From NCBI GenBank assembly GCA_053919585.1, contig JBSSHM010000304.1: a stretch of DNA of 59,935 nucleotides; one strand, 5' to 3'. A program made the position numbers and the translations under genes. The stretch's first letter is position 1. Every line of letters starts with the position of its first letter. Below the pieces are notes generated by a model that saw only the letters and a program-made list of their open reading frames with translations, searched no databases and was not told where the DNA came from. Origin of the DNA: Euprymna scolopes. Taxonomy: Eukaryota. Below are positions 1-19,737 of this stretch, one piece after another.

Positions 1-3000
1 GTATTAGTTGGTTTGGATTTCTCTATAGATGTGTTGCCAAAAGCATTGGGCTCATTCTCATATAATCCATCTACTGCTGTAGCCATTATTGAGGACGTAG
101 TGGATCCAGTAGTTGTTATTGCAGCATTAACAACTACAGCAAGTGAGGATGTTGCGAATAATAGTTTACGTTTCAAAGTACAGCTTCAAAGTAAGATTAG
201 TACAGGCAATTTGGTTAACTTAGTGAATCAAACTCGGACACCCATTCAAGTTGTTTTAGAGATTGTTTCTACAGCTGGTTTCGGATTAGCGACTAGTTCG
301 GATGTACGTCCAGTTGTTAGTGGTGGTATATCACTACAATATCCAACAGCCACGATTGGTGTTAACTCTTCTGCTTCTGAGTTGGTTTTTGAAGTGGTTG
401 ATGATCTTCTTCTTGAGGCTACGGAGAAGTTGAAATTAAAAATTACGACATCTACTCATTCGTTAGTAAATGTTTATGCTCCTAACAGTGAAGCAGAAGT
501 CACAATTTTTGATAATGAAGTTGCTTTTGTAAATTTAGAGTTGCTAGCTAATGGTCATGAAAATGGATCACCTCTTTTAATAAAAGTTGCTTTGGATTCA
601 AAAAATAGCAAAAATCAGGTTCAGTATGGTAGCTTTAATCAAGCATTGGTTAATGAGACGGGTACTTCCATTACGGTTGCTTTTAACTATCCTGTACCTA
701 AGCAAGGCAAACACCAAGCGATTCCAGGTGTAGATTTTTCTGAGATAAAAAATATTGCTATTGCTCCAGGGGAATCTTCAACAACTCTATCACTGAGTGT
801 ATTGACTGATAATTTATGGGAAGATGAAGAGCCTGTAGAGGTAGAGATTTCAACGGTTAGCCACCCATCGGCTAATGTTAGCCGAGGAGGAATGACATCA
901 CTGCCGTTTGCGAATGGATCTTTGGCATATATTTATGATAGCCAAAACGCAACAAATAGCATAAAAGTTACTTTGGATACAAAAAATGGTGCATATAATT
1001 CAGCACAGGATGTTGATCTAAATGTCTCCTTAGCAAGAACAAACTTTACTGGACGAGATGTAGAGCTTGCTGTTGAGTTGGTTGGTTCAAATCAAGCTTT
1101 GGATGTTTATTCAACCACAGACTTTGTGATAGTAATTGCAGAAAACAGCAGTGAAACAACCTTTACTTTGGCAGTTAGAACAAATTCTTTTAGTGCGGTT
1201 ACTCCAGTTCCTATATCTGCTCAGATAACAAATGTTAACAGCAATCATCAAGCTTTAGATACTAGAGGGTCTAGTGTTACATGGAATATTTTTGAGCAAG
1301 GTAGAAACTTACTTGTAGCAACCTTTAGTGCAAGCAATGCAAAAGAAAGTGCAGGAAACTCTGCATTAATTGAAGTCAATATTGATAATCCATTCTCTGA
1401 GACAGTGACTTATTCTGTTAATGCGGTGTTTGATGGTTTGGCAAGCGTGGCAGATTTAAGCACAACGGCTTTATGGTATGACATTGTTGTACCAGCTGGT
1501 GCAACATATGGAAGCACCTATATTCATATCATTGATGATAATTTATTTGAGCAAGATGAGACTTTCACAATTTTAAATTCAAATGTACGTTTTGTGAGTA
1601 CAGGAGCCCTACCAGCAGTTCAAGTTGCTAATCGAAATTTGACAGTAAGTATAGAAGACAATGATTTCACAACTGTATCAATTAGTATTAATAGACCAGC
1701 TGTTGCTGAGGGAAGCAGTGCGATATTAACGGTCAGTTTAGATAAGATTAATAATACAGGAAGTGGTTTTTCCATAGAGTTGGCTGATAACCTGGATGCA
1801 GGCTCTCGTGCTAGATTTGCAGATATTATTGAGACAGTTAATAGCGTGCTGATACCGAATAAAGGATCAATAGCAACGGCTACAATTACTGCTGATAAGG
1901 ATAACTTCTTTGAATTAGATGAAAAATTAAACATCAGAGTTGCTGGATTTGGTCCACGTTTATTTGCTCAAACTGTGAAACGAATCAATACCTCTCATGC
2001 ATCTGCCACACTTACAATACTTGATGGTGATGATAAAGACCTCACCTATAGGTTAAGCTTTACTCATAATCGCTTTATTGAGGGTACGATTCTGACTCTA
2101 ACTTTAGATATGAGTAAGAGAAATGAAACAGGGCAGGCGGTTGTCTTTGATCCAAAATTTATCAAAGGAGTTGGACATACAGCATTAGATAATCTTGACG
2201 TTAATCTTCCATCTTCTAATATATCAATTCAGACAGGAAGTCAAGAAGTTGAATTTGAAGTGAAGTATCTTGAGGATACACTCTATGAAGGTATTGAGAA
2301 CTTTAATGTTGCTGTTGATATTGGTCAGGCATGGTCACAATATTTCATAACGAAGACAACAAGTGCGGAATTCTTTATAGAAGATAAGCAGGTTAAAGAT
2401 GGAATTGGTGTGGTCTTTAATTTAGCTGACTTTAAAGAAAGTGGTGTAGGTAGTGTTACGAATTTAACAGCAACATTATATCCAATTACTAACGGCAGAA
2501 TAAATACAGCTGTTCCGCCAGTAGTGAATAATACCAGTGAAACTCTGTTTATTTCACTAGATTATTCTGGACGGGCAAAAGTAGGCGTTGATTACAGCAC
2601 GTCTGCAAGCACCATTGATATTCCTGTAGGGCAATCACAAGGTCAGATTGTACTAACAGGTATTAGTGATAATTTGTTTGAAAATGATGAGAGCATAATA
2701 GTTTCCTTTGCTTCAGCGAAAGGTGCCGTGCCAGAGGCGTTGAATAATTATAAATCTGCTATGAGTTCTGCTTCTGTTGTCGTTATTGATGATGATAATG
2801 CACCTAATAGCATTAAGTTGACACCATTGCCAATATTTGGCACAGAAAATTCAACAAATGCAGAGATTGTCTTTGTATTGGCAAGCACAAATCATACGGA
2901 GTCTGATATTGAGCTAGACTTAAGTTATAGCTCAAACAGTGCTCGTTGGGGTTCATCAATGTCAAACCCACATATAGATATCTATGCAGATAAGAAAGTT

Positions 3001-6000
3001 TACATCAAGGTTGGAGAAAAACAAACAACAGTAGTTATGACAATCATTAATGATGAATTGTTTGAGGATACCGAACACAGTGATATTCAAATTGTAAAAG
3101 TATCCGATCCGGCAGTTATTTCAGGGCAAAGTACTCGAGTACAGATATTTGATGATGAAGCATTAGATGGCGTTTACCTAGAGTATACATTGAAGTCAGT
3201 TGGTACAGAGGGAGGCACCTCAATGGTTACAACTTTTGAGATGATCAATTTTGATGGTACTAAGCGTTATACAAATGAGACATCACAAACGATTACATTG
3301 AGATTTGGTCAGTTGGGAGGCAGAGCTATAAAAAATAGTGACTTCTTCTATGATCGGTTTAATTCGACTGGTGTTAAAGTGGTCGTGGGCAAAGGTGAAA
3401 AAGGTGGTCGTATAGAAATAGGTGTTTATAATGATTTGCTATTTGAATCAACCGAAACAATTATTTATGGTCTAGTTGATAAAAGCAATAACTCAATTAG
3501 GCAGAGTACAGCTGTAGCAGATATTATAGATAATGATACAGCAACGATTGTTCTTGCACCGTATACAAAGGGTGTGGAGGATGCTTCTGGATCAAAACCT
3601 ATTACATATAAGCTGTCGTTATATTTACTATCTGACTTGACTACGCCGACGGTGAACCACAGTTCAGGGGCATTACAGTTTGGTGTTAAGGCAGTTGGTG
3701 GTGTAGCAATCAATCGTTCAGGATCAAATCTTGGGGATTATGAGTTATTGAGTGCAAACATTATAGAAATCCAAGAAGGCTCTAGCTCGGGTATACTGAG
3801 CATTCCAGTCAATGATGATTCGTTATTTGAATTAGAAGAAAGTGTAGAAATAGAAGTGGATGTACATAGCACAGCCTTGCCATTAAATGATTTAATTGTT
3901 GCAAATACACCAACTGCTTACACAACAACTAACTTTATTGTTGATAATGACACAATAACGGTAACTATCTCAACAATTACTGATGGTGCTGAGGGTGGAA
4001 CAACTTCACCTGTAGTTATTCAAGTTAGCTTGGGTCTTATTAATGACACATCACAGACTTTATTAGTGCCTTTATCAATGAGTTCAACAGTCGGTAATGC
4101 GATATATTTCACGGGTGCTAATGCTACCGAGGCAGATTATGGTGGCATTGCTACAGCAACTATTTTAATTGGGAAATCTACGGCAGATGTTACTTTTACA
4201 GTAATAGATGATAATCGACTAGAGTTTAGGGAGTATTTTGATGTTAATATTGCGGGTTTATATAGTGCAAAAGGACAGAAAATCATCAATAGTATAGCAC
4301 TTGTTAGCACAGATGTTAAGAAGGCAAGTATTATGGATAATGAATCCACGCGTGTTATAGTGAGCATTATTAATGGTAGCGAGCGTCCTTCTGATGCTGA
4401 ACTACGTATTGCTTTGGATTCTGGTGTGGTTAGTGGATTAGTAAGCTCAATGGTATTTAAAGTAGATTTGAGTTCTAATGCTGGTGATCATGGTGTACCT
4501 GGATTTGGTTTACACTTTAGTACAAATTCAATAACGAGCACCTTCACAGATATTACGAATGTTCCTGAATATATAGAAATAGGTTTTGGTGAAAACACCC
4601 ATGCATACAGAATGCCGGTAATTGATGATCCGTATTTTGAAGGCGAAGAAACATTATTGTTAAAATTTAACGCAACTGGCATGATTTCTGGAAAAATAAA
4701 TCTTAATTCAACAACTATGGCATTAGGTGTCAGAGATAATGATGATTTAGCAAATTCTATAGAAACAACCATGACAATGCTTATTGATACAGCGTATGAG
4801 CCAAACTCAACAGATCAAATTGTTTGGTCAGTATCTTTAGCAAAAATCAATTACACAAAAAGCACAATAACGGTTGGCTTTAGCTATAAAGGTGCAGCCA
4901 TTGCAGATACAGACTTCAGTAGTGCGGTGGCAACCATCGCGATAGGTGATAAAAATACTCAAGTATCCATTCTTCCTATAGATGACTTATTGGTTGAGTC
5001 AACAGAAACAATTGAGATTCAGTTTAATGCAAAAAGTAATCAAGCATTATCATTTGATAGACAGCAAAGAAATATTGGTCCATTGAAGGCAGCTATTGGT
5101 GATGATGATATTCAACGGATGACAATTATTCCAGTCACAACACCTTTAGTTTTAACAGAGCAAGGTGGGGCAAAAGATTTCTTATTTGAGATGGTTGATA
5201 TAACTAATACGGCAATTAAGCTATACAATGGTCTATCTGCACCAATGAAGTTTGATTTAACATACAGTGGTCGGGCTAGTCGTAATGGTGCAGGAGTCGA
5301 TTATTCAGCTCCAGATAGTATTTTTATAGCAATTGCAAACAGTACAATGTCATTAAAAATCATTCCTGTGGATGATGTGCGTTTTGAAGGTGATGAAGAT
5401 ATTAAAGTATCATTTACTAATTCTTTAGCATCACAAAAGATTTTCACGACTCAAACGATTGTTCTTGAGGACAGTGATGATAAAAATGTTACGGCAACAA
5501 TTAGTATACAAAAACTTCCAGTAGAAGGTGTTACAACAGGGGTATTAGTGGTGAGCTTACCAGTCATAAATGAGACCACATCTTCTGTAATATTGAGCTT
5601 GTCATCATCGGGAAGCGTGGGTTCAGACGAAGTAAAATTAAGTACCTCGGTAATAAACATTCCTCCAGGTAGCGATAAGCAACTGGTAGAAGTCTTTACA
5701 GGCAATGATAGGCTCTTAGAATCTACGGAATATCGTTCAGTATGGGTAAGTAAGGTGTTATCGAATCATAGCATTCACATGCTTGCTTCAACCTCAGTTC
5801 CAGTTATTGATGATGAGTTAATTAATACAAGAATTCAATCAAGCATATCTATGGGATATGAAAATGGAACCCCTGTCACAGTTGTCGCACATTTAGTTGA
5901 TATACGGGATCTTAGCACCGTCACCTATGCGATTATCGGACAAGATTTGAGGGTTTCTCCAAGTATTGATTTCTCAACAAATCAAACTCAAATTGATTCA

Positions 6001-9000
6001 AGAGATGTGAATGAAGGGGCATTTATTCCTAGATCATTTAGCCTTCAAGATACTACAGAGGTTACATTGATATTGCCAGTTATTAAAGATAGTTTATTTG
6101 AAACCATTGAGTCAGTAGTGATTAATTTAACTGCAGAAATCGTACCTTTTGTTGGTGTAAACAAACTTTCAACCAAGACATTATTAACACAAATACAGGA
6201 TACCCTTCCAACACCCAAATATTCTATAGAATTTAGTGCAGATAGTAGCGTAGTGAAAGAGACCTCTCTTACAGCGTCATACGTAGTTTCTTTGAAAAAT
6301 GGACAACAGAATATCGTAAACAATACCTCAAAAGATATTATCCTTGCTATAGACTACTTAGGTAATGCAACCTTAGGCGAGGATTACAGTACGTCGATGA
6401 ATTATGTAACTATTGCTAAAGGTCATTCAACAGGAGCTTTGGTTCTATCTATAATTGATGATAATTTATATGAAAAAGATGAAGAAATTGTATTGTCATT
6501 AAATAAACAAAAAAATAGTGGCTTATCTGCATACTTCTTGCTAGATAGCTCATTCACAACAATCATTTTAGATAATGAAAGTCGTAGGGATTTAGAGGCA
6601 ACCTTTGTATTATCATCAACCTCCTTATCTATCAACGAGTTAAGTTTATTACCTGTTGATATTGATGTAATTCTCTCATCAACTAATAATATCGGCTCAG
6701 ATTTATTACTGAATGTTGTTTCTCTAGGTAATGCTGTAATTAATAAAGATTTTGAAGTGCTCTCTACTCAAGTTAGAATTGCTAATAATAGTCGAGTTGG
6801 AAAAATAACTTTGCAGTTAAAAGATGATAAGCTAATTGAAATGAATGAGAGGATTGTGTTAGCTGTTGACAGTCTTTCATTTGGTTCATTGCGTAATACA
6901 GGAAGTAGTGCGGTGATAACGATTATTGATGATGATTATCTAGCAAAAGTTGGTGTAAAATTTTCTGTCCTCCAAGTTGGGAAAGAAAGCACAACAGTGT
7001 TTAATTTAAGCTCAGAAACGGCAACAATTCAAAATAACAGTGTAGATATTATTCTACAGGCCAAACTGCATAAGGCTAATTCAGTGAGTTCTTTGATTGG
7101 TAATGGATTTAACAGCACATTAAGTGTTTTAGTCTATCGTTCATCAGATTCAGTGGCATCAATTCATGATGTATCTATACCAAGTACGACAGCTTTTTAC
7201 TTTGCACCAAACTCATCATTATCAACATTGAGATTAACGGTACATGATGATATATTATTTGAAGGCAATGAAATTGTCACTATTCGATTAAGTTCGCCAA
7301 CATTAACCACGCCTTTTGCTAGCTTACCAGTTGGTTCTCGTTCTTCTATAACTAGTGGCTTTAACCGATTACATCAACGGTATGTGGAAGCAATTATTGA
7401 GGATAATGAAGCACTATCAGGCATTCCAGTAACTTTTACTACGAAAAGCAATGGGGTGGAGGGAGCATCTTTAGGTAATGTATTAATTAACCCTATACCG
7501 CTCACTTTTGAAGTACAGATGGCATTAGCAAATCACACCAATAAACCGATTGATATACCAGTAGGCTATACGGGAGGTACAGCAATAGGATCATCCACAT
7601 CAGGATTTGGTGTTGATTACAGCAATGCAAATACAAGTCTTATTGTTCCTATTGGTTCAGACAAGGCGATTCTAACAGTACAAGTCTTTAATGATGAATG
7701 GCAAGAAAAAGATGAAACCGTATTTATTTCCTTTAGCAATACTTATAAAAACATATTGAAATTTACTAATTCATCCGTGATTGGTTTAATCAAAGATGCA
7801 GGAACAGATACAGATGGTGATCGTCTTCCTGATATTTACGAAGCGGCTTTCGGAAGTAATCCAAATGTTAAGGATACTGATGGCGATGGTTTGAATGATG
7901 GCGACGAGTATATGAATTTTGTTGCAACAAATTCAACACCAAAATTAAATATATTGATTGCTGATACTGATGGTGATGGTATCTTAGATGGCGATGAAGA
8001 TTTTGATGGTGATGGTTTAACAAATAGCGAGGAAATTGCAAATAAAACCAATCCATATTCTTCTGATACAGATGGTGATCGCCTAACAGATGCACAAGAA
8101 ATTAAGATCACAAAAACAAGCCCAATTCTTGCAGATAGTGATAATGATGGAATATCTGATGCAGATGAAGATTTGGACTATGACTCATTAACCAACTGGG
8201 AAGAATTTAATATTTATGGTTTAAGTCCAGTTAAATTAGACACCAATGAAGATGGGGTGACGGACTTTAATGAAGACGCTGATGGTGATGGGGTAAAAAA
8301 TGGTAATGAAAGGGCCGTGAATCTTTTCGCCCAACAAGTTGCCTCAGGTGTCTTTGATGCAAAAGTGAAGTTGAATGATGATATTGATAATGATGGTTTA
8401 GTTTATGGTGTTGATCCAGATAGTAACAATGATGGTATTATTGATAGTGCTTATGACTTTGATAAAGACGGTTATCCTGATAATTATGAAATTGCTATAG
8501 GAAGAGAAGGGGATCCTCTAGATCCTGCTATACCAGCTCAATTTACCACTTTCCTTAAACTATTGAAAGATCAAGATTTTGATGGTGATGGTTTAATGAA
8601 TCTATGGGAAGTTCAGCATGGATTAGATCCCAAAGTTGCAACCATGGCAGATAGAGACTTTGATGGTGTCCCAGATGTAGTAGAATCCTACATCTCCTGT
8701 AGTCGGACAACGGGTACGCTCACACAATGGCCAGAGATAATGTATGGTTGTAGCTCTACATCAAATGTCACATTAGATACCGATACGGATGGAGATGGCT
8801 TGCCTGATTTTTCAGAAGTGATATTAGGAAGTGATTTTGCTGATAATCAAAGTCCACCGAAGATTATATCAACGAATGGTTTAGAGAGTTCTATTAATCA
8901 ATATTTGTCAAAATATAATGTCATTGCAACAGGTATTGATTCAGATGCTGATGGAGATGGCTTTACTGACTTAGAAGAAGCAAAACTTGGCTTGAATCCT

Positions 9001-10116
9001 GCTGTCCATTCACAGCCAGTTATATGGATAGATGTCTCGCAAGAAAATGTTGGCGGTGTTAGTGCTATCAGACAAAATAGAGGCTTTGTGGTTGCACATG
9101 TGCTAATAGGAGGCAGACAGCAGATGGTTGATGTTGATTGGAATGGTAGTAGCCAAGAGGTTAAATCAGCTATTACTGGCAAGAGTGCTTGCACGCAAGC
9201 TGATGGTTTGGCTCTTCAGTGTAAGAAGATCATACTTGATAGTAGCAAGTTATCTGCAGGGCAGAAGTTAAAATTTGTTGTCAGTGCGTATCGTTATAAT
9301 CAGGGTAGAACGAAGAGAACGCCAACATCAATATATGAACTAACCATTCCTGTAGTTAGAACAACGGTTGAGAAAGATCTCATTATCGATGCTAATTTTG
9401 ATGGTCGTCCAGATAGCAAATTTGTTAAGAAAGATAATATCGTGGTATCTAATGAGGAGATTGTTCGATTTGGCGAGGCCACAGCTATCGGTGCCTCAGG
9501 TATTTTGATGAGATATGGTGATGTGGCTCGTTTATTTAATCCAAGCATTGGAGTAAGTGTATCAGAAAAAGCTTTTGTAGATTTTTACGGTAAAGGAGAT
9601 GATGAATTTATCTTTACTGTCAGTCCATATAACCTGCAAGTAATTTCTCTACCAGAGGTTGGCAGTAAAGTGTCGATTATTTACAAGCTTTCTAGCAACT
9701 TGCCAATAGGTACGAATATTGCTAGAATCAGGACAACTAGGGGATGGGTTGATTTCACGCCTACTGTGAGTGATCGTGTTTACTCATCAAGAATATCAGG
9801 CAATTCTGACTGTCCAACACTTCCTACTGCCTATAGTGTGGGTATGGTTTCTGGAGCAAATTGTATCAAACTAGATATCACAGATGGAGGAATAAATGAT
9901 GAAGATGGACAGCGAAATGGTAGTGTGCGTAATAGCTTCTCTGTAGGTACTTTTGATGCAGAAATTGTAGTTTCCAGTGGACTTGGTGGAGATGGTTTTG
10001 ATGGTAGTGGTTGTTCATTAGGTGGTAATCAAGGTAAATTTGATTGGGTATGGGTATTGTTATTGTTAGGAGCAATACTTGTTCACTTAATCAATCGTCG
10101 TAGAGCGAACAAATAA
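1..10116 (+). CDS. Giant surface adhesin-like protein, 5'-truncated by the window: about 20 Calx-beta-like repeats, TSP3-like Asp-rich repeats, choice-of-anchor-U-like domain, C-terminal sorting anchor
   Basis: Frame 1 is open from base 1 (GTA TTA GTT GGT TTG), so the real start lies upstream. A (D/N)DxLxExxE...IxDxD motif recurs about every 125-130 aa. Many DTDGDG/DFDGDG motifs occur at about 7800-9000. The C-terminus reads CIKLDITDGGINDEDGQRNG, then a Gly-rich linker, GCSL, a hydrophobic helix and RRR. Confidence 0.85.
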   Translation, partial: VLVGLDFSIDVLPKALGSFSYNPSTAVAIIEDVVDPVVVIAALTTTASEDVANNSLRFKVQLQSKISTGNLVNLVNQTRTPIQVVLEIVSTAGFGLATSSDVRPVVSGGISLQYPTATIGVNSSASELVFEVVDDLLLEATEKLKLKITTSTHSLVNVYAPNSEAEVTIFDNEVAFVNLELLANGHENGSPLLIKVALDSKNSKNQVQYGSFNQALVNETGTSITVAFNYPVPKQGKHQAIPGVDFSEIKNIAIAPGESSTTLSLSVLTDNLWEDEEPVEVEISTVSHPSANVSRGGMTSLPFANGSLAYIYDSQNATNSIKVTLDTKNGAYNSAQDVDLNVSLARTNFTGRDVELAVELVGSNQALDVYSTTDFVIVIAENSSETTFTLAVRTNSFSAVTPVPISAQITNVNSNHQALDTRGSSVTWNIFEQGRNLLVATFSASNAKESAGNSALIEVNIDNPFSETVTYSVNAVFDGLASVADLSTTALWYDIVVPAGATYGSTYIHIIDDNLFEQDETFTILNSNVRFVSTGALPAVQVANRNLTVSIEDNDFTTVSISINRPAVAEGSSAILTVSLDKINNTGSGFSIELADNLDAGSRARFADIIETVNSVLIPNKGSIATATITADKDNFFELDEKLNIRVAGFGPRLFAQTVKRINTSHASATLTILDGDDKDLTYRLSFTHNRFIEGTILTLTLDMSKRNETGQAVVFDPKFIKGVGHTALDNLDVNLPSSNISIQTGSQEVEFEVKYLEDTLYEGIENFNVAVDIGQAWSQYFITKTTSAEFFIEDKQVKDGIGVVFNLADFKESGVGSVTNLTATLYPITNGRINTAVPPVVNNTSETLFISLDYSGRAKVGVDYSTSASTIDIPVGQSQGQIVLTGISDNLFENDESIIVSFASAKGAVPEALNNYKSAMSSASVVVIDDDNAPNSIKLTPLPIFGTENSTNAEIVFVLASTNHTESDIELDLSYSSNSARWGSSMSNPHIDIYADKKVYIKVGEKQTTVVMTIINDELFEDTEHSDIQIVKVSDPAVISGQSTRVQIFDDEALDGVYLEYTLKSVGTEGGTSMVTTFEMINFDGTKRYTNETSQTITLRFGQLGGRAIKNSDFFYDRFNSTGVKVVVGKGEKGGRIEIGVYNDLLFESTETIIYGLVDKSNNSIRQSTAVADIIDNDTATIVLAPYTKGVEDASGSKPITYKLSLYLLSDLTTPTVNHSSGALQFGVKAVGGVAINRSGSNLGDYELLSANIIEIQEGSSSGILSIPVNDDSLFELEESVEIEVDVHSTALPLNDLIVANTPTAYTTTNFIVDNDTITVTISTITDGAEGGTTSPVVIQVSLGLINDTSQTLLVPLSMSSTVGNAIYFTGANATEADYGGIATATILIGKSTADVTFTVIDDNRLEFREYFDVNIAGLYSAKGQKIINSIALVSTDVKKASIMDNESTRVIVSIINGSERPSDAELRIALDSGVVSGLVSSMVFKVDLSSNAGDHGVPGFGLHFSTNSITSTFTDITNVPEYIEIGFGENTHAYRMPVIDDPYFEGEETLLLKFNATGMISGKINLNSTTMALGVRDNDDLANSIETTMTMLIDTAYEPNSTDQIVWSVSLAKINYTKSTITVGFSYKGAAIADTDFSSAVATIAIGDKNTQVSILPIDDLLVESTETIEIQFNAKSNQALSFDRQQRNIGPLKAAIGDDDIQRMTIIPVTTPLVLTEQGGAKDFLFEMVDITNTAIKLYNGLSAPMKFDLTYSGRASRNGAGVDYSAPDSIFIAIANSTMSLKIIPVDDVRFEGDEDIKVSFTNSLASQKIFTTQTIVLEDSDDKNVTATISIQKLPVEGVTTGVLVVSLPVINETTSSVILSLSSSGSVGSDEVKLSTSVINIPPGSDKQLVEVFTGNDRLLESTEYRSVWVSKVLSNHSIHMLASTSVPVIDDELINTRIQSSISMGYENGTPVTVVAHLVDIRDLSTVTYAIIGQDLRVSPSIDFSTNQTQIDSRDVNEGAFIPRSFSLQDTTEVTLILPVIKDSLFETIESVVINLTAEIVPFVGVNKLSTKTLLTQIQDTLPTPKYSIEFSADSSVVKETSLTASYVVSLKNGQQNIVNNTSKDIILAIDYLGNATLGEDYSTSMNYVTIAKGHSTGALVLSIIDDNLYEKDEEIVLSLNKQKNSGLSAYFLLDSSFTTIILDNESRRDLEATFVLSSTSLSINELSLLPVDIDVILSSTNNIGSDLLLNVVSLGNAVINKDFEVLSTQVRIANNSRVGKITLQLKDDKLIEMNERIVLAVDSLSFGSLRNTGSSAVITIIDDDYLAKVGVKFSVLQVGKESTTVFNLSSETATIQNNSVDIILQAKLHKANSVSSLIGNGFNSTLSVLVYRSSDSVASIHDVSIPSTTAFYFAPNSSLSTLRLTVHDDILFEGNEIVTIRLSSPTLTTPFASLPVGSRSSITSGFNRLHQRYVEAIIEDNEALSGIPVTFTTKSNGVEGASLGNVLINPIPLTFEVQMALANHTNKPIDIPVGYTGGTAIGSSTSGFGVDYSNANTSLIVPIGSDKAILTVQVFNDEWQEKDETVFISFSNTYKNILKFTNSSVIGLIKDAGTDTDGDRLPDIYEAAFGSNPNVKDTDGDGLNDGDEYMNFVATNSTPKLNILIADTDGDGILDGDEDFDGDGLTNSEEIANKTNPYSSDTDGDRLTDAQEIKITKTSPILADSDNDGISDADEDLDYDSLTNWEEFNIYGLSPVKLDTNEDGVTDFNEDADGDGVKNGNERAVNLFAQQVASGVFDAKVKLNDDIDNDGLVYGVDPDSNNDGIIDSAYDFDKDGYPDNYEIAIGREGDPLDPAIPAQFTTFLKLLKDQDFDGDGLMNLWEVQHGLDPKVATMADRDFDGVPDVVESYISCSRTTGTLTQWPEIMYGCSSTSNVTLDTDTDGDGLPDFSEVILGSDFADNQSPPKIISTNGLESSINQYLSKYNVIATGIDSDADGDGFTDLEEAKLGLNPAVHSQPVIWIDVSQENVGGVSAIRQNRGFVVAHVLIGGRQQMVDVDWNGSSQEVKSAITGKSACTQADGLALQCKKIILDSSKLSAGQKLKFVVSAYRYNQGRTKRTPTSIYELTIPVVRTTVEKDLIIDANFDGRPDSKFVKKDNIVVSNEEIVRFGEATAIGASGILMRYGDVARLFNPSIGVSVSEKAFVDFYGKGDDEFIFTVSPYNLQVISLPEVGSKVSIIYKLSSNLPIGTNIARIRTTRGWVDFTPTVSDRVYSSRISGNSDCPTLPTAYSVGMVSGANCIKLDITDGGINDEDGQRNGSVRNSFSVGTFDAEIVVSSGLGGDGFDGSGCSLGGNQGKFDWVWVLLLLGAILVHLINRRRANK
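390..7800 (+). repeat. About 20 diverged protein-level Calx-beta-like repeats, period roughly 380 nt
   Basis: DDLLLEATE, TDNLWEDEE, DDNLFEQDE, KDNFFELDE, EDTLYEGIE, SDNLFENDE, NDELFEDTE, NDLLFESTE, DDSLFELEE, DDNRLEFRE, DDPYFEGEE, DDLLVESTE, DDVRFEGDE, NDRLLESTE, KDSLFETIE, DDNLYEKDE, DDKLIEMNE, DDILFEGNE, NDEWQEKDE, plus one degenerate unit. No obvious DNA-level identity between units. Confidence 0.8.
7801..9000 (+). repeat. Bacterial thrombospondin type 3-like Ca2+-binding repeats
   Basis: DTDGDRLPD, DTDGDGLNDGDE, DTDGDGILDGDE, DFDGDGLTN, DSDNDGISD, DADGDGVKN, DFDGDGLMN, DTDGDGLPD, DADGDGFTD, often followed by (G/T)xNP. Confidence 0.8.
9976..10116 (+). other. JDVT-CTERM-like C-terminal protein-sorting signal
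   Basis: SGLGGDGFDGSGCSLGGNQGKFDWVWVLLLLGAILVHLINRRRANK*: Gly-rich, GC(S/T), about 8-residue spacer, FD, TM helix, basic tail. Confidence 0.6.
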
Positions 10117-10209: not shown

Positions 10210-11135
10210 ATGAATAAATATATCCAACAGGCAAAGATAGGTTTTATTGGCTTGGGTATTATGGGCTTTCCTATGGCTAGTAATTTATTAAAAGCGGGTT
10301 TATCTGTGATAGCCTTTGCGAGAAAGCAAGAGGTGTGTCAGCAATTTATTTCTTTAGGTGGGCAGTGTCAGGTTTCTCCTTATGAAGTTGGCAAGTGTGT
10401 TGATATACTCATCACGATGGTTCCGGATAGCCCGCAAGTCAAAGAAGTGCTGTTCGCAGAAAATGGTGCATTAAAAGGGTTAAAACAAGATACATTAGTT
10501 ATTGATATGAGTACAATAAGCCCTGTTGAATCTTTGCTCATAGCACAGGAGCTTGAAAAAAAAGGTGTACGCATGTTAGATGCTCCAGTTTCTGGAGGTG
10601 ATGTTGGAGCAAAAGCAGGAAGTTTATCTATAATGGTTGGTGGTGATAAAAAGATGTTGCTCAAGCCATGCCTATTTTTCATATTTTAGGAGAAAACATT
10701 ATTCATGTTGGCGAGAAATCATCTGGACAAATATGTAAAAGTTGCAATCAAATGCTTGTTGCTCAGTTATTAAATGCCGTTTCAGAGACTTTGTATTATG
10801 CGGAAAAGACGGGGGTTGATGCCTATAAGGTTAGAGAGGCATTAATGGGAGGTTATGCAGGCAGTAGGGTATTAGAAATTCATGGCTTAAAAATGTTGCA
10901 AAGAGATTTTCAAGCAGGTTTTAAATCATCTTTGCATCTCAAAGATATGCATATTGTTAAACAAGCTCTGCAATATTATGATGTGGAGTCAATATCCACA
11001 GAAGTTGCTACAAAAAAAATTGCCACTGTTGTTGAGCAGGGCAATGGTCATTTAGATAACAGTGCTATTCATCAAATCACTCACAATAATAGTGATAAAT
11101 CTTGTGAAAAACAGCAGGGATTTAAACCTTTATGA
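10210..11135 (+). CDS. glxR: 2-hydroxy-3-oxopropionate (tartronate semialdehyde) reductase, HIBADH family; split by a 1-nt frameshift at about 10648-10652
   Basis: IGFIGLGIMG Rossmann motif, DMSTISP, DAPVSGG, CKSCNQ. Adding one A to the A5 run joins 10210-10689 and 10668-11135 into 308 aa (..GGDKKDVAQAMPIFHILG..). Confidence 0.75.
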
Positions 11136-11166: not shown

Positions 11167-11508
11167 TTATTGTGGTTCTTTAGGTATTTCTGCATCAATA
11201 TTATTTTTTTCTAACTTACTGACAACATTTTGTTGATCAAAATATACAATAAGATGTTTGCGGAAAAAGTCCCCATTGGATAAGCGAAGTTGATAAACGT
11301 AGATCCATTGATTACGATTTAAAGGGTTATACAAAAGCGGTAACCCAAGATAGGATTGTACCTGTTCTTTTGAATCACCTATTTGGATTTTATTCACCTG
11401 TTCTTTTTCAATAATATTTCCTTGTTGTCGTTGAGGTTTATACAGGCATCCTGATGAGATGAGGATTGCGACACAAAGAATAGTTGAGGTGATTCCTCGT
11501 ATAATCAT
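11167..11508 (-). CDS. bamE: Outer membrane protein assembly factor BamE (SmpA/OmlA lipoprotein)
   Basis: Lipobox ISSGC, QQGNII, SKEQVQSYLGLP, WIYVY. Confidence 0.9.
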   Translation of the reverse strand: MIIRGITSTILCVAILISSGCLYKPQRQQGNIIEKEQVNKIQIGDSKEQVQSYLGLPLLYNPLNRNQWIYVYQLRLSNGDFFRKHLIVYFDQQNVVSKLEKNNIDAEIPKEPQ

Positions 11509-12527: not shown

Positions 12528-13005
12528 TAGATTGGGAGAGTTTTAATGTTTTCTGTGCTTCTTTTGATTTGTTTTCATCAATTTCAGCATCAATGATTTG
12601 GCTTTTTTCCAAGTGTACCTTGACTTGTTTAGGGAGGATGCGGTAGAAATCTTGGCTATCAGCTTTATGGCTATAGCCAGTAAATAATGCACCGGTTTCG
12701 AAATTAATATTTTCAGTTTTCACTTCACCATGCACTTCACCACCGGATTTTATTTCTAAAAACTGGCAGTCTATTTGTCCATTAAACTTACCACTAATAA
12801 TAATATTTTTAGCAAGAATAAAGCCAGTAACATTACCGCTTTGACCAATGGTTATATTATTTGTAGAGAAAATACTGCCCTCAAAATAGCCATCAATATG
12901 GCAATCTGCATTCAGTTCGATTTCTCCTCGTATGGAACACCCATTTGAAAGGATGCTTTTTCCTTTATGTATTGTATTCTTATTAGGTTGGTTAAAAATT
13001 GCCAT
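12520..13005 (-). CDS. Bactofilin (CcmA-like polymer-forming cytoskeletal protein)
   Basis: MAIFN N-terminus and beta-helix repeats SILSNGCSIRGEI..HIDGYFEGSI..ITIGQSGNVTG..GALFTG. Confidence 0.9.
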   Translation of the reverse strand: MAIFNQPNKNTIHKGKSILSNGCSIRGEIELNADCHIDGYFEGSIFSTNNITIGQSGNVTGFILAKNIIISGKFNGQIDCQFLEIKSGGEVHGEVKTENINFETGALFTGYSHKADSQDFYRILPKQVKVHLEKSQIIDAEIDENKSKEAQKTLKLSQSND

Positions 13006-15274: not shown

Positions 15275-16210
15275 ATGAATTACGCATCAATAAATTCTTT
15301 GTTTTCTGCGACTATTTCATTGATAATAATGGTTCTTGTTGCCTATGTTGGCTCACTTTTTACTTGGCAAATAGTCAACCAACAAGATGAGAATAATCCG
15401 TTTATTTCTCCGATTGCTCAGTCAAATAATAACAGTATAGAACAAGGGAATTTATTATCTATCTACCCCTTATTTGGGGTTCCCCCTGTCGTTAAGGTAA
15501 CAAAAAAAAGACGTCCACAAGCTAAAAAACGAGAAAAAGTTAGGGCGGTCGCACCAAAGGTTAAGCTTAAATTACGAGGCATTTTATCTGGAGTAGAGAG
15601 CTATGCTATTATTGAGGTTTCTGGTGATCAAGGGGTGTATGCTGAGGGGGATAATATTTCATATTTATATATTTTAGAAATTTCCAGTGATTACGTTGTA
15701 TTTGATGATGATGGTATTGAGCACAAAGTATACGTCAGTGATGAGAGCGTCTCTATTGGTGGTGGGGAGCGTAGTCAACACAGTTCTGCTAATCAAGCAC
15801 AGCCAGACTATGTAAGTAGAGTAAGTAATAATGATATTGATAACAATGCCTTGCCAACATTTGTAGCAAATTTATCTTTTAAAGAGAAAAAGGCACTACA
15901 GGATTTAAAAAAAACATTACGTACAAACCCGCTACAAGCACTAGGCAAGGTTAATGCTTTTCCATATCGTGAGAGTGGCAAATTAGTTGGTTATCAAGTG
16001 ACTCCAGGATCAGAAAGGGTATTGTTTAAAAATGCGGGCTTACAGGCTGGAGATATTATTTTAGATATCAATGGAGAGCCTTTGTCAGAAATTAAAGATT
16101 TTACAAGAGGAATGAAGTTAATGGAGCAGCTGGGTCAGACTGATGCATTAGATTTATTAATTAATCGGCGTGGTATCGAACAAAGAGTATACATTAATAT
16201 AGAGCAATAA
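15275..16210 (+). CDS. gspC: Type II secretion protein C (TM, HR and PDZ domains)
   Basis: N-terminal TM, LFG, LKLRGIL..AIIE HR domain, GLQAGDIILDING PDZ domain; lies directly before gspD. Confidence 0.85.
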   Translation: MNYASINSLFSATISLIIMVLVAYVGSLFTWQIVNQQDENNPFISPIAQSNNNSIEQGNLLSIYPLFGVPPVVKVTKKRRPQAKKREKVRAVAPKVKLKLRGILSGVESYAIIEVSGDQGVYAEGDNISYLYILEISSDYVVFDDDGIEHKVYVSDESVSIGGGERSQHSSANQAQPDYVSRVSNNDIDNNALPTFVANLSFKEKKALQDLKKTLRTNPLQALGKVNAFPYRESGKLVGYQVTPGSERVLFKNAGLQAGDIILDINGEPLSEIKDFTRGMKLMEQLGQTDALDLLINRRGIEQRVYINIEQ

Positions 16211-16285
16211 AAAAAGGTTATCTGTATGAAAAATTGTTATAGATATATCTATAAAAACAAGTAACACGAGAGATAATATAGGTAT

Positions 16286-18214
16286 ATGTTAAATTATTTT
16301 ATTCATCTTACGATTAGGAAAGCGGTTCTTATTCTTGCCTTAATTTTTCTTTTGCCGGTGAGTTACTCTCCATTACCAGTTTTGGCAAAAACAAAAAAAG
16401 GTGTTGCTTCATTAAACTTAAAGAATGCAAGTCTACGAACATTAATCAGTACGGTATCACGAGCTACGGGAAAGAATTTTCTTATTGATCCTCGTGTCAA
16501 GGGTTCTGTTACTGTAGTAATTTCTACGCCACTAGATGCCAAGGCGTTATATCAAGTTTTTTTATCCATTCTTAAGGTGCATAATTTTATTGCGGTTGAG
16601 GGTGAGTATGTGACTAAAATTTTGCCAGCAAATCAAAGCAAGACAAATAGTGCCTATGTATCAGGTGCAAATCCAGATTCGTTAGTAACAACGATTGTAC
16701 CAATTAATTACATCAATGCTCAACAGATTATTCCAGTATTGAGACCTTTTGTATCATCAAATTCTTTTTTATCTGCTTATGCTCCGACGAATGTATTGAT
16801 TATTCATGATACTAAGGCGAATTTAAATCGCCTTAAAAGATTGATTAATGCGGCAGATAAGCCAATCGATCAAGATTTTGAAATTATTCCAATTAGGCAT
16901 GCAAGTGCTTTGGAGATTAGTAAAATAGTTAGTACATTTTTGTCACGTGAAAAAAATGTGCCAGCCAAACAGCGCGTGCATCTTGCTGCTGAGGTCAGGA
17001 CAAATCGAATTATTGTTAAGGCTGATAAAGAACAGCGTTTAAAAATTCGTGCATTGATTAGTGAGTTAGATATAGAGGATATTAGAGGGAACACAAGTGT
17101 TATCTACTTAAAATATGCCAATGCAAAGTTGATTCTTCCGATTTTACAAGGTGTGTTAAAGGGGGGGGATACAAAAAAAGGTGGAAGTAGTACACATATT
17201 CAAGCAGATGAAGAAACAAATTCTATCGTTATTACTGCACCACAAGATGTGGTATTTTCAATAAAAAGCATTATTCGTCGTTTAGATATTCGTCGTGCAC
17301 AGGTTTTAATACAAGCAATTATTGCCGAGGTATCCTCTGATATTCGTGATACGCTTGGCGTACAGTGGCTATCTAACGCCCGTGTAGATGTGGGGGAAGG
17401 TAATCAGGGGGCAGCAATTGGCACCATTAATTTTGATAATTCATTGCCAAGATTGGTAACGAATCCAGCACAAGCTGCATCGTCTATTCCTCTTGGAGCA
17501 GGTATCGTGGTTGGTGAGATTCAAGACTCAGTGAATAACATAGGTTGGGGGGCATTATTAAATTTGCTTAGTTCACATGGTCAGGTTAATTTATTATCAG
17601 CCCCCTCTATTGTGACATTAGATAATGAAGAGGCAAGTATTCTAGTTGGTCAAGAAGTACCCTTTATTACTAACACGCAGCTTTCTGCAAATAATACGAA
17701 CCCATTTCAGAATTATGAGCGTAAAGATGTTGGATTGTCATTAAAGGTTAAGCCACAGATTAATGAAGGCGATGCAATCAAGCTAAGCATTGAGCAAGAA
17801 ATATCTAATATTATTGCTACGGCACAGGCAGCTGATACCGTAACATCTAAGCGAACATTAAAAACATCGGTGCTGATAGATGATGGTAAGGTAATTGTCT
17901 TAGGGGGTTTAATGGATGAATCAGGAAGTGCATCACAATTAAAAATTCCTCTTCTAGGTGATATACCATTATTAGGGTTTTTCTTTCGGTATAGTAATGA
18001 TTCCTCAGCTAAACGCAATCTCATGCTATTTATTCGCCCACAAATTGTGCGAGATGGAAAAGCGCTTAATGCCATTTCATTAGCTAAATATAATGAGATT
18101 AAAGCACAAAGATTGCAACTAAAGGAAGAGGGTACACTTCCTGCTGTTAATATCAAAATTGACGATTATATTTACACATCAACGCTTACAAGTGGCACTC
18201 CTAAAAACAACTAA
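16286..18214 (+). CDS. gspD: Type II secretion secretin GspD
   Basis: TGKNFLIDPRVKGSVTV, LDIRRAQVLIQAIIAEV, TLDNEEASILVGQEVP, KIPLLGDIPLLG. Confidence 0.95.
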   Translation: MLNYFIHLTIRKAVLILALIFLLPVSYSPLPVLAKTKKGVASLNLKNASLRTLISTVSRATGKNFLIDPRVKGSVTVVISTPLDAKALYQVFLSILKVHNFIAVEGEYVTKILPANQSKTNSAYVSGANPDSLVTTIVPINYINAQQIIPVLRPFVSSNSFLSAYAPTNVLIIHDTKANLNRLKRLINAADKPIDQDFEIIPIRHASALEISKIVSTFLSREKNVPAKQRVHLAAEVRTNRIIVKADKEQRLKIRALISELDIEDIRGNTSVIYLKYANAKLILPILQGVLKGGDTKKGGSSTHIQADEETNSIVITAPQDVVFSIKSIIRRLDIRRAQVLIQAIIAEVSSDIRDTLGVQWLSNARVDVGEGNQGAAIGTINFDNSLPRLVTNPAQAASSIPLGAGIVVGEIQDSVNNIGWGALLNLLSSHGQVNLLSAPSIVTLDNEEASILVGQEVPFITNTQLSANNTNPFQNYERKDVGLSLKVKPQINEGDAIKLSIEQEISNIIATAQAADTVTSKRTLKTSVLIDDGKVIVLGGLMDESGSASQLKIPLLGDIPLLGFFFRYSNDSSAKRNLMLFIRPQIVRDGKALNAISLAKYNEIKAQRLQLKEEGTLPAVNIKIDDYIYTSTLTSGTPKNN

Positions 18215-18237
18215 TAAACTGGTATCTACATACTGAT

Positions 18238-19695
18238 ATGCTGAGTTTTAGTTTTGCACGCAAAAATCAAATACTTGCAGAAAAAGGAAATGAAGGCTGG
18301 ATAGTTAGTTACAGTGGCGATTTCAATTTACCTATTTTTGTTGAGACACAAAGAGTTTTAGGCAATATTTCTTCTTTACAGTCCATTGAAGGTGAAGCGT
18401 TCAATCAAAAATTACAGACCTTATACAGTGGGCAAACAGAAGGCTTGGGTGAGTTAAGCGACAGCTTAGATGGTGCGGTGGATTTAGATGAACTGGTAAC
18501 GCAGTTAGATGAACCAGAAGACTTATTAGAGTCGGAAGAAGATGCACCGATTATTCGCCTGTTAAATGCTCTTTTTTCTGAGGCAATTCATTCAAATGCT
18601 TCAGACATACATGTTGAATCATATGAATCACGTAACCGAGTACGTTTTCGTATTGATGGCGTCATGAAGGAAGTCATGACTTTGCAAAAGCACATTGCAC
18701 CATTACTTATTTCACGTATTAAAGTGATGTCCAAATTAGACATTGCAGAAAAAAGAATCCCTCAAGATGGACGTATTGCCTTACGTTTAGGAGGACGTTC
18801 TGTGGATTTACGTGTCTCAACCATGCCCTCTGCACAGGGCGAAAGGGTTGTGATGCGTTTACTTGATAAACAAGCAGGGAGATTGCAGCTAAATAGTTTA
18901 GGTTTGCCAGAAAAGAGCGTTCATTTAGTGGAGCAACTAATTAATAACCCATATGGTATTATTCTAGTTACTGGACCAACTGGTTCAGGAAAAACCACCT
19001 CTCTCTACGCTGTACTTACACAACTTAATAATAATCAACGCAATATTATGACAGTGGAGGATCCGATTGAATACAATATTGAAGGCATCAATCAGACCCA
19101 AATTAATGAAAAAATTGATATGACTTTTGCTCGAGGTATCCGTGCCATTCTTAGACAAGATCCAGACGTTGTCATGGTTGGAGAAATTCGAGACACAGAA
19201 ACAGCACAAATTTCAGTCCAAGCTTCACTTACTGGACATTTAGTACTTTCGACCTTGCATACGAATACCGCAGTTGGTGCGGTGACTCGTTTGCGTGATA
19301 TGGGGATTGAATCATTTCTCCTTGCATCAAGTTTAATAGGGGTGGTAGCACAGCGTTTAACCAGACGCTTATGTGAGCATTGCAAGGCGCCTTATGAAGC
19401 ACGGGAAGAGCAAAAACTAGTAATGGGCATTCCTGAGAGTGAAAAGATTGTTTTTTACCAACCTGTTGGTTGTGAAAGTTGTGCTAAAACAGGATATTCT
19501 GGGCGTATTGGTATCTATGAAATACTCATGATTGATGAAAAAGTACGTAAGTTAATTCATGAAGAAGCAAGTGAACAACAAATTTTAGAATATGCTCGTC
19601 AACACACACCAAGTTTGCAACAAGAAGCCTTAACCTACCTCATTGAAGGAAAAACCTCTTTTGAGGAAGTCGTTCGAGTTATCCACAATATTTAG
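18238..19695 (+). CDS. gspE: Type II secretion ATPase GspE
   Basis: ASDIHVE, GPTGSGKTT, LRQDPDVVMVGEIRD, GHLVLSTLHTN, two CxxC motifs. Confidence 0.95.
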   Translation: MLSFSFARKNQILAEKGNEGWIVSYSGDFNLPIFVETQRVLGNISSLQSIEGEAFNQKLQTLYSGQTEGLGELSDSLDGAVDLDELVTQLDEPEDLLESEEDAPIIRLLNALFSEAIHSNASDIHVESYESRNRVRFRIDGVMKEVMTLQKHIAPLLISRIKVMSKLDIAEKRIPQDGRIALRLGGRSVDLRVSTMPSAQGERVVMRLLDKQAGRLQLNSLGLPEKSVHLVEQLINNPYGIILVTGPTGSGKTTSLYAVLTQLNNNQRNIMTVEDPIEYNIEGINQTQINEKIDMTFARGIRAILRQDPDVVMVGEIRDTETAQISVQASLTGHLVLSTLHTNTAVGAVTRLRDMGIESFLLASSLIGVVAQRLTRRLCEHCKAPYEAREEQKLVMGIPESEKIVFYQPVGCESCAKTGYSGRIGIYEILMIDEKVRKLIHEEASEQQILEYARQHTPSLQQEALTYLIEGKTSFEEVVRVIHNI

Positions 19696-19737
19696 ACTGC
19701 AAGTAATTTATAAAACCCATGTCTATGATTATCTATT

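What the first reader, a model, noticed from the sequence alone, without database searches (positions are those of the whole stretch)
1..10116. Giant (>3370 aa) Calx-beta / TSP3 surface protein ending in a Cys-type JDVT-CTERM-like anchor
Seen: about 20 highly diverged Calx-beta-like units, an Asp-rich Ca-binding block, a C-terminal domain (CIKLDITDGGINDEDGQRNG, resembling choice-of-anchor U) and a GSGCSL-x8-FD-TM-RRR tail. Known: Cys-bearing CTERM tails (JDVT-/MYXO-CTERM) are proposed substrates of glutamic intramembrane proteases, and related GlyGly-CTERM proteins are surface-displayed through the type II secretion system. Inference: this is a very long, Ca2+-rigidified adhesin tethered by a little-studied sorting system, unusually large cargo for that route.
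Basis: partly seen in the sequence, partly recalled or inferred. Interest (0 to 1): 0.7.

Follow-up and report, generated by a model that had tools for sequence, protein, structure and literature searches.

The report
Giant JDVT-CTERM-anchored bacterial adhesin
The window holds the last 3,371 residues of a roughly 15,000-residue calcium-binding surface adhesin from a bacterium living with a cephalopod; it ends in a true JDVT-CTERM sorting tail, which makes it by far the largest client yet seen for that little-studied sorting system.

Summary
Window 1-10116 is one open frame with 20 Calx-beta-like units and a 400-residue Asp-rich TSP3 block. It then has a beta-sandwich domain and a tail that passes NCBIfam's JDVT-CTERM cut-off (30.6-38 bits against 27).

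The cognate protease MrtJ is on another contig of the same bacterium (94.8 bits against 75), with its catalytic motifs intact. This is the only JDVT tail in the assembly, as is usual for the system. gspCDEF lies 5 kb downstream and gspL is on a third contig; gspG was not found.

The window is a whole bacterial contig inside a 5.9 Gb cephalopod assembly. Contig C688 (32.7 kb, wholly coding) is its upstream part. A metagenomic relative carries a colinear ortholog of at least 13,290 residues (41-56% identity). That ortholog also shows that about 1,120 residues are missing between C688 and the window. The gene is therefore about 15,400 codons, and the N-terminus is still missing.

C688 carries four single-base frameshifts at short homopolymers. 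I could not tell assembly error from recent decay, because no reads were listed.

Export by Sec, MrtJ and the type II system is inferred by analogy with MYXO-CTERM. It is a new, extreme member of a known kind.

The parts
1..10116 (+). C-terminal 3,371 codons plus stop of the giant adhesin gene. It is open at the contig start. The upstream part is on contig G000:C688, with about 3.4 kb unassembled in between.
130..7767 (+). Array of 20 diverged Calx-beta-like units (aa 44-2589). The array continues from 18 units on C688.
   Evidence: Pfam Calx-beta 95.5 bits; jackhmmer found 20 domains; this unit subtype occurs only on C223 and C688 in the whole assembly
7807..8946 (+). Asp-rich bacterial TSP3-type calcium-binding block (aa 2603-2982) with 16 DxDxD[GS] motifs
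   Evidence: TSP3_bac 53.5 bits
9151..9990 (+). Membrane-proximal C-terminal beta-sandwich module. Its last domain (aa ~3165-3320) is choice-of-anchor-U-like and carries the DGGxNDxDGxxNG motif.
   Evidence: choice_anch_U 26.3 bits, below cut-off 32; 1,078 homologs, mostly at C-termini ahead of sorting tails; AF2 model pLDDT 81.6
10003..10113 (+). JDVT-CTERM sorting tail: a single Cys (C3338), Asp at +10, a Leu-rich transmembrane helix and an RRR cluster
   Evidence: NF033191 scores 30.6, 37 and 38 bits against cut-off 27; predicted helix at residues 299-320 of the model
10210..11135 (+). Tartronate-semialdehyde-reductase-like gene split into two frames at an A5 run near 10645. It is not part of the system. 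It marks the same kind of homopolymer frameshift seen in the giant gene.
15275..20955 (+). gspC, gspD, gspE and gspF: the type II secretion genes proposed to carry the processed adhesin across the outer membrane
   Evidence: GspD 516 bits, GspE 663 bits; GspC and GspF fall just under their cut-offs

Best explanation
Window 1-10116 is the membrane-proximal end of one enormous gene of a host-associated gammaproteobacterium whose contigs sit in a cephalopod genome assembly. The gene is about 15,400 codons, roughly 1.7 MDa.

Architecture, from the far end inward:
- C-type-lectin and cadherin-like modules, including 4.4 near-identical 745-residue tandem repeats. These are on contig C688.
- About 47 Calx-beta-like units.
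- A TSP3 calcium-binding block.
- A beta-sandwich 'choice-of-anchor' domain.
- A Gly-rich linker.
- A JDVT-CTERM tail.

Proposed mechanism:
1. The protein is exported through Sec and is held in the inner membrane by the tail's transmembrane helix, with the Arg cluster in the cytoplasm.
2. The single tail cysteine is modified.
3. The CPBP-type glutamic intramembrane protease MrtJ, encoded on contig C550, cuts just after that cysteine.
4. The type II secretion system moves the processed protein to the cell surface.
5. There calcium stiffens the long stalk, and the distal lectin and cadherin modules bind host surfaces.

What is shown: the domain content, tail membership, presence and intact catalytic motifs of MrtJ, a single client in the assembly, presence of gspCDEF and gspL, and colinear conservation of the whole gene in a relative.

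What is inferred by analogy with MYXO-CTERM/MrtX (PMC11980579): the Sec signal, cysteine lipidation, the cleavage site, type II transport and the adhesin role.
For: Tail and protease
- The tail passes NF033191 and scores higher for JDVT-CTERM (38 bits) than for MYXO-CTERM (22.2 bits).
- MrtJ (NF033192) scores 94.8 bits against a cut-off of 75 on C550. Its EExxxR, FxxxH and HxxxN motifs are invariant against two 66-73% identical homologs.
- Only one JDVT tail was found in the assembly. This matches the 'one per proteome' rule in the Haft preprint.

Secretion genes
- gspCDEF are in the window and gspL is on C503.

Same genome
- C550, C503 and C688 share the window's tetranucleotide signature (r = 0.76-0.81, against 0.24-0.66 for other gammaproteobacteria).

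One gene across C688 and the window
- C688 is coding from end to end on one strand.
- Its pieces and the window ORF align colinearly, at 41-56% identity, to a single open gene of at least 13,290 residues on a 49 kb metagenome scaffold.

Extracytoplasmic life
- The window ORF has only 7 Cys in 3,371 residues: three close pairs plus the tail Cys.

Choice-of-anchor behaviour
- Homologs of the C-terminal domain carry JDVT-type tails (42 of the 50 tails scanned, ours included) or GlyGly-type tails.
Against: - The N-terminus is missing here and in the relative, so no signal peptide has been seen.
- Four single-base frameshifts interrupt the C688 part. If they are real, no full-length protein is made.
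- mrtJ is not next to the client gene. It has lost the start codon used in its relatives and reads on from an unrelated upstream stretch.
- The nearly invariant DP of JDVT tails is DW here, one residue further from the Cys.
- gspG was not found.
- The gsp adjacency is not conserved in the relative.
- Nobody has tested JDVT-CTERM or MrtJ experimentally, and no type II substrate of anything like this size is known.
Confidence: 0.62

Rival explanations
1. The gene is freshly broken in this bacterium. On this reading the four frameshifts on C688 and the altered start of mrtJ are real, part of the gene decay of a host-restricted bacterium. The JDVT-tailed C-terminal part in the window would then no longer be made as part of an exported protein.
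For: There are four frame changes in 32.7 kb of C688. The 50 kb of housekeeping genes sampled in the window show one. Other genes near mrtJ are split or truncated: copA is in four pieces and uvrD has lost its start.
Against: All the frameshifts that could be placed are one-base changes in runs of 3-6 identical bases: two on C688 placed exactly against sister repeat copies, and the garR one in the window. Two of them lie inside 95-98% identical tandem repeats, where consensus errors are expected. There is no in-frame stop anywhere in 42.9 kb. Sequence on both sides of each shift is still 54-56% identical to the ortholog. The ortholog has no frameshift outside its N gaps.
Confidence: 0.3
2. The protein is a surface adhesin but leaves the cell by another route. 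It could use type I secretion, like the RTX/LapA-type giant adhesins. Alternatively it could stay anchored in the inner membrane by its uncleaved tail and reach through the envelope, with the type II genes nearby only by chance.
For: Giant repetitive calcium-binding adhesins of Gram-negative bacteria normally use type I secretion (general knowledge). The gsp adjacency is not conserved in the relative. gspG was not found. There is a faint Pfam LapA hit, 14.8 bits against a cut-off of 27.
Against: No RTX nonapeptide family was reported by Pfam or NCBIfam. The extreme C-terminus is a transmembrane helix plus an Arg cluster, which does not fit a type I signal. A dedicated MrtJ is kept with intact catalytic residues in three related genomes.
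Confidence: 0.12
3. The tail is a lookalike handled by a different sorting enzyme, such as a MYXO-CTERM-type myxosortase or a rhombosortase. The MrtJ on C550 would then serve another purpose.
For: The tail also passes the MYXO-CTERM cut-off (22.2 bits against 20). It lacks the Pro of the DP motif. The same C-terminal domain is paired with GlyGly-type tails in other species.
Against: The JDVT-CTERM score is much higher (38 bits). The ortholog's tail keeps the same C-x9-DW form. NF033192 is reported to occur only in genomes with JDVT tails. This is the only such tail in the assembly.
Confidence: 0.05

Closest known systems
JDVT-CTERM / MrtJ sorting system (Haft, bioRxiv 10.1101/2023.06.07.544157; NCBIfam NF033191 and NF033192)
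   Same: It has the tripartite tail with one Cys, an Asp in the helix, a Leu-rich transmembrane segment and an Arg cluster. There is a single client in the assembly. A CPBP protease scores over the MrtJ cut-off. The host is a gammaproteobacterium.
   Different: The client is about 15,400 residues, while the largest other JDVT-type tail among the top 150 homologs belongs to a 2,600-residue protein. The tail has DW instead of DP, one residue further from the Cys. mrtJ is unlinked here and in two relatives; about half of Haft's 36 cases were also unlinked.
MYXO-CTERM / myxosortase MrtX of Myxococcus xanthus (Guo, Haft & Wall, mBio 2025, PMC11980579)
   Same: The tail is Cys-bearing and tripartite, and the protease is a close CPBP relative. 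This is the only experimentally tested model: Cys-dependent cleavage followed by type II-dependent surface display.
   Different: Myxobacteria have dozens of clients per genome and often a GCGC motif. MrtX has a large extra N-terminal domain. The present tail scores lower on that model (22.2 bits against 38).
GlyGly-CTERM / rhombosortase clients such as VesB of Vibrio cholerae
   Same: A C-terminal tail is cleaved by an intramembrane protease and the protein is then surface-displayed through the type II system. The same choice-of-anchor domain precedes GlyGly-type tails in about a third of the homologs.
   Different: The protease class and tail motif differ. Those clients are small enzymes, not megadalton adhesins.
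Giant proteins of marine host-associated gammaproteobacteria (Endozoicomonas genes of 15-65 kb, bioRxiv 10.1101/2025.03.06.641946; an 11,389-residue protein of Ca. Steroidedax, bioRxiv 10.64898/2026.08.06.743379)
   Same: They are repetitive proteins of more than 10,000 residues with cadherin and adhesion domains, in bacteria living with marine invertebrates. The Steroidedax protein even carries a 'myxosortase-dependent' domain annotation.
   Different: Those reports do not analyse a C-terminal sorting tail or its protease. Homology to this protein was not tested. LeuB places this bacterium no closer than 66% identity to any species representative.
Type I-secreted RTX adhesins (LapA, SiiE, MpIBP)
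   Same: They have megadalton size, a calcium-stiffened tandem beta-sandwich stalk and ligand-binding modules at one end.
   Different: Those proteins have C-terminal RTX repeats and an uncleaved type I signal, and are held by an N-terminal plug. Here the C-terminus is a membrane anchor, so the polarity is reversed.

Membership tests
JDVT-CTERM domain (NF033191) | HMM score at or above the curated cut-off (27 bits) | tested here: met
   30.6 bits on the whole protein, 37 bits in the genome scan and 38 bits on the last 70 residues
JDVT-CTERM domain (NF033191) | Tripartite tail at the extreme C-terminus: Cys motif, hydrophobic helix, Arg cluster, and only one Cys | tested here: met
   The tail has GSGC, then a Leu-rich 18-residue stretch, then RRRANK followed by the stop. 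C3338 is the only Cys in the tail. AF2 predicts a helix there.
JDVT-CTERM domain (NF033191) | Nearly invariant Asp-Pro nine residues after the Cys | tested here: not met
   Asp is at +10 and is followed by Trp, and the ortholog is the same. Among 49 related Cys-type tails the Asp is at least 90% conserved, but the Pro is present in only about half, and DW/DF/DY variants exist.
JDVT-CTERM domain (NF033191) | Typically one client per proteome, co-occurring with MrtJ | tested here: met
   One tail at E <= 1 in the whole assembly; MrtJ is present. The bacterial genome is incompletely assembled, so further tails cannot be excluded.
JDVT-CTERM domain (NF033191) | Client gene adjacent to mrtJ (16 of 36 cases in Haft; frequent but not defining) | tested here: not met
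   mrtJ is on C550, in the middle of the contig. The gene after the client is a reductase. The two closest mrtJ homologs are also unlinked.
MrtJ, CPBP glutamic intramembrane protease (NF033192) | HMM score at or above 75 bits, and the catalytic EExxxR / FxxxH / HxxxN motifs | tested here: met
   94.8 bits; Pfam Rce1-like 54.8 bits; E162, E163, R167, H202, H239 and N243 are invariant in the alignment
MrtJ, CPBP glutamic intramembrane protease (NF033192) | Intact, expressible gene | tested here: inconclusive
   The Met used by the 188- and 201-residue homologs is Ile here, and the frame stays open about 60 residues further upstream into unrelated sequence
choice-of-anchor U domain (NF041766) | HMM score at or above 32 bits | tested here: not met
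   26.3 bits, E = 1e-5. The domain family is real (1,078 homologs) and sits ahead of alternative sorting tails.
Calx-beta (PF03160) and bacterial TSP3 (PF18884) | Pfam gathering scores | tested here: met
   95.5 bits against 27, and 53.5 bits against 25
Type II secretion system | Core set GspC, D, E, F, G, L (M) | tested here: inconclusive
   GspD, GspE and GspL are over their cut-offs. GspC (101.3 against 101.6) and GspF (420.2 against 424) fall just under. GspG was not found with TIGR01710 or PF08334 in an incomplete assembly.
Type I-secreted RTX adhesin | C-terminal RTX nonapeptide repeats and type I signal | tested here: not met
   No RTX family was reported by Pfam or NCBIfam. The C-terminus is a transmembrane anchor.

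The most novel reading that the evidence does not exclude
The gene is intact and the frameshifts are assembly errors. A folded, calcium-binding protein of about 1.7 MDa and 15,000 residues is then cleaved by MrtJ and passed through the type II secretin to the cell surface. That would be at least ten times larger than any known type II substrate. It would mean that Cys-type CTERM sorting, rather than type I secretion, can build megadalton adhesins, here with reversed polarity: the C-terminus at the membrane and the lectin tip outward. The protein would then be the main host-attachment organelle of a cephalopod symbiont.
Probability: 0.2. Interest if true: 0.75.

Novelty: new member of a known kind. 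Interest (0 to 1): 0.5.

Why it matters
JDVT-CTERM and MrtJ are known only from comparative genomics, and their clients so far look like ordinary-sized proteins. A conserved client of about 15,000 residues raises a question about the Cys-tail pathway. Either the pathway, and possibly the type II secretin, can handle megadalton rod-like cargo, or such clients reach the surface in another way.

The protein is also a concrete candidate for the host-attachment molecule of an uncultured cephalopod-associated bacterium. It is built from animal-like adhesion modules: C-type lectin, cadherin, Calx-beta and thrombospondin type 3.

There is a practical point as well. Gene callers behind the public protein collections did not call the ortholog at all. 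Such giants are therefore under-counted in protein databases.

Tried and rejected
1. Direct abutment of C688 and the window. The frames fit and the two ends looked like halves of one unit. I rejected this because the ortholog has about 1,120 residues between the two points, and about 28 residues of the unit itself are missing.
2. Public reads, to settle the frameshifts and the junction. No run was listed.
3. Word search for giant proteins sharing the C-terminal 322 residues. It gave one weak hit. This is not evidence of absence, because the ortholog was never called as a gene.
4. Search for the N-terminus. No further contig turned up in the assembly, and the word search with the first 916 residues of C688 was blank.
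5. Species identification with LeuB. The best match was 66% identity, spread over many gammaproteobacterial families, so no close relative was listed among the species representatives. The sample accessions were not found in any paper.
6. Fold of the C-terminal domain. Foldseek found nothing at E <= 0.001. VIA-align's best matches were ZU5/FIIND/GAIN-type beta-sandwiches at Z 5.8-6.9, below the level at which the tool says a match can be trusted.
7. gspG was not found with two different models.
Full report
**What the window is.** The window is the whole of contig C223 (59,935 b) of a 5.9 Gb, 925-contig assembly. The contig is bacterial, with 35-41% GC. Its housekeeping genes are dense and mostly intact: asd, leuB, rluC, hemE, pepA, valS, pyrF and thiC. 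LeuB is at most 66% identical to any species representative, and the best hits are scattered over many gammaproteobacterial families.

**Checking the observation.** Frame 1 is open from base 1 to the stop at 10114-10116, giving 3,371 codons.
- Pfam gives Calx-beta 95.5 bits and TSP3_bac 53.5 bits, both over their cut-offs.
- An iterative HMM seeded on the best Calx-beta stretch finds exactly 20 units between aa 44 and 2589.
- The Asp-rich block (aa 2603-2982) holds 16 DxDxD[GS] motifs.
- The tail is GSGC-SLGGNQGKF-DW, then a Leu-rich helix, then RRRANK.
- NCBIfam JDVT-CTERM scores 30.6 bits on the whole protein, 37 bits in the genome scan and 38 bits on the last 70 residues. The cut-off is 27. 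MYXO-CTERM scores only 22.2 bits.
- choice_anch_U scores 26.3 bits, below its cut-off of 32.

**The sorting enzyme.** NF033192 (MrtJ) matches once in the assembly, on contig C550, at 94.8 bits against a cut-off of 75. The ORF has a Pfam Rce1-like domain. It keeps the EExxxR, FxxxH and HxxxN motifs, which are invariant against two homologs of 73% and 66% identity from other samples. In both of those homologs' contigs mrtJ stands alone among housekeeping genes. An unlinked mrtJ is therefore the habit of this lineage. In Haft's survey 17 of 36 clients had MrtJ within 4 kb.

Here the Met start used by the homologs is Ile, and the frame continues about 60 residues upstream into unrelated sequence. 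Neighbouring genes on C550 are split or truncated. C550, C503 and C688 share the window's tetranucleotide signature (r = 0.76-0.81), whereas other gammaproteobacteria give 0.24-0.66. Only one JDVT tail exists in the assembly, which is the reported norm.

**Secretion genes.** gspC, gspD, gspE and gspF lie at 15275-20955, about 5 kb downstream of the giant gene. gspL is on C503, next to msbA. gspG was not found with two different models, but the bacterial genome is clearly only partly assembled. In the relative described below, the genes downstream of the ortholog are different. The adjacency to gsp is therefore probably coincidental.

**The gene is far larger than the window shows.**
- Searching the assembly with the first 800 residues led to contig C688.
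- All 32,749 bases of C688 are open on one strand, in four successive frames. It carries C-type lectin, cadherin-like and cadherin domains. It also has a 2,235-base tandem repeat of 4.4 copies at 95-98% identity and, at its 3' end, 18 Calx-like units.
- This unit subtype occurs nowhere else in the 5.9 Gb assembly.
- The exhaustive protein search with the C-terminal 321 residues gave one close hit, P0004, at 53% identity. It lies on a 49 kb ENA metagenome scaffold.
- I walked that scaffold through small antisense ORFs. The ortholog is open from the tail to the scaffold end, about 39.9 kb or at least 13,290 residues. It is interrupted only by two 100-N gaps, which I left unfilled.
- The alignment is colinear throughout. 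C688 piece 1 matches the relative's N-side piece at 41-50%. C688 pieces 3 and 4 match residues 73-4753 of its middle piece at 54-56%. The window ORF matches residues 5907-8744 at 48.5%, and the tail piece matches at 54%.
- C688 ends opposite about residue 4783 and the window starts opposite residue 5907. About 1,120 residues (3.4 kb, about nine units) are therefore missing between the two contigs.

An early impression that the contigs abut directly was wrong. The gene is therefore about 15,400 codons. Its N-terminus is missing both here and in the relative.

**The frameshifts.** C688 changes frame four times.
- Two changes are one-base deletions relative to sister repeat copies: GGG to GG near 17295, and TTTT to TTT near 18649.
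- The other two sit in short stretches that contain A4 and T5 runs.
- The only split gene seen in the window, a tartronate-semialdehyde-reductase-like gene, is broken at an A5 run.
- On both sides of each shift the translation still matches the ortholog, and there is no in-frame stop in 42.9 kb.

This pattern fits consensus errors in a low-coverage contaminant contig. It fits very recent inactivation equally well. No sequencing run was listed, so I could not decide. I put about 0.3 on real breakage.

**The C-terminal domain.** It has 1,078 homologs at E <= 0.001, nearly always at the C-terminal end of proteins of 150-4,520 residues. Of the top 150, 49 end in Cys-type tails and 48 in GlyGly-type tails. 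Of the 50 tails scanned, ours included, 42 hit JDVT-CTERM. This is what 'choice of anchor' means, even though the curated model's cut-off is missed.

The largest JDVT-tailed homolog among them is 2,600 residues, so this client is an outlier by about six-fold. That margin comes with a caveat: giant genes are under-called in these collections. The AF2 model (pLDDT 81.6) shows beta-sandwich domains, a disordered Gly-rich linker and a terminal helix. Structural matches are weak, with ZU5/FIIND/GAIN-like folds at Z <= 6.9.

**Mechanism.** No one has tested JDVT-CTERM or MrtJ experimentally. The nearest tested system is MYXO-CTERM/MrtX. There, cleavage needs the Cys, works in E. coli, and surface display depends on the type II system; lipidation of the Cys is proposed. 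By analogy I propose Sec export, a C-terminal membrane hold, Cys modification, MrtJ cleavage and type II transfer to the surface. Once there, calcium stiffens the Calx-beta/TSP3 stalk, and the distal lectin and cadherin modules contact the host. The scarcity of Cys, seven in 3,371 residues as three close pairs plus the tail Cys, suits an extracytoplasmic protein.

The weak points are the unseen N-terminus, the missing gspG, and the sheer size of the protein for a type II substrate.

**Comparison and novelty.** It is a member of the JDVT-CTERM/MrtJ kind by every score-based test. It departs in the DP motif (DW at +10) and in linkage to mrtJ. Giant adhesin-like genes of 15-65 kb are already reported in Endozoicomonas. 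An 11,389-residue protein with a 'myxosortase-dependent' annotation is reported in a coral associate. Size alone is therefore not new. What is new is the explicit pairing of a conserved client of about 15,000 residues with a JDVT tail and its protease. I rate it a new member of a known kind, of moderate interest.

Noticed in passing
G000:C688:11080-20822 (loci L088, L089): A 2,235-base (745-residue) tandem repeat in 4.4 copies at 95-98% identity, each copy with a C-type lectin and a cadherin-like domain. Copies 1-2 and copies 3-4 form two subgroups (11-18 differences within a subgroup, 60-73 between). The relative's scaffold has an N gap at the matching place, so the copy number is probably unreliable in both assemblies.
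   Followed up: partly
G000:C550:7448-8221 (locus L004): The mrtJ ORF reads on about 60 residues upstream of the start used by its homologs. From memory that stretch resembles the N-terminal motif of IS5-family transposases, but Pfam gave no hit for it. The neighbours look decayed: copA is in four pieces, queC appears broken near its 3' end, and uvrD lacks its start.
   Followed up: partly
G000:C550:1-4000 (locus L004): This stretch has 29-30% GC and a weaker tetranucleotide match to the window (r = 0.51) than the rest of the contig. It may be foreign or non-coding DNA.
   Followed up: no
window 10210-11135: A tartronate-semialdehyde-reductase-like gene directly after the giant gene is split into two frames at an A5 run near 10645.
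   Followed up: partly
window 15275-20955 and G000:C503:35091-36137: The type II secretion genes are scattered: gspCDEF is in the window, followed by a convergent rluC, and gspL is on another contig next to msbA. GspC and GspF score just under their NCBIfam cut-offs.
   Followed up: partly
window 9430-9960 (aa 3143-3320): The predicted C-terminal beta-sandwich has its best structural matches to ZU5, FIIND and GAIN domains, which are self-cleaving modules in animal proteins. Z is only 5.8-6.9, below the trust level. Whether the adhesin could be shed by self-cleavage is an open question.
   Followed up: partly
loci L103, L116-L119 (ENA ERZ23492170 scaffold_4): The public gene calls for this scaffold list no gene on the strand of the 40 kb ortholog except its last 489 residues, and otherwise list only small ORFs, nearly all antisense. 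Giant proteins are thus partly invisible to protein-database searches.
   Followed up: yes
window 11505-12527: The aspartate-semialdehyde dehydrogenase is of the asd_B type (432 bits) rather than the usual gammaproteobacterial type (90 bits).
   Followed up: no
window 12520-13829: The M23 peptidase ORF (12912-13829) overlaps by 94 bases a 161-residue same-strand ORF with no NCBIfam match. This may be one more frameshifted gene.
   Followed up: no
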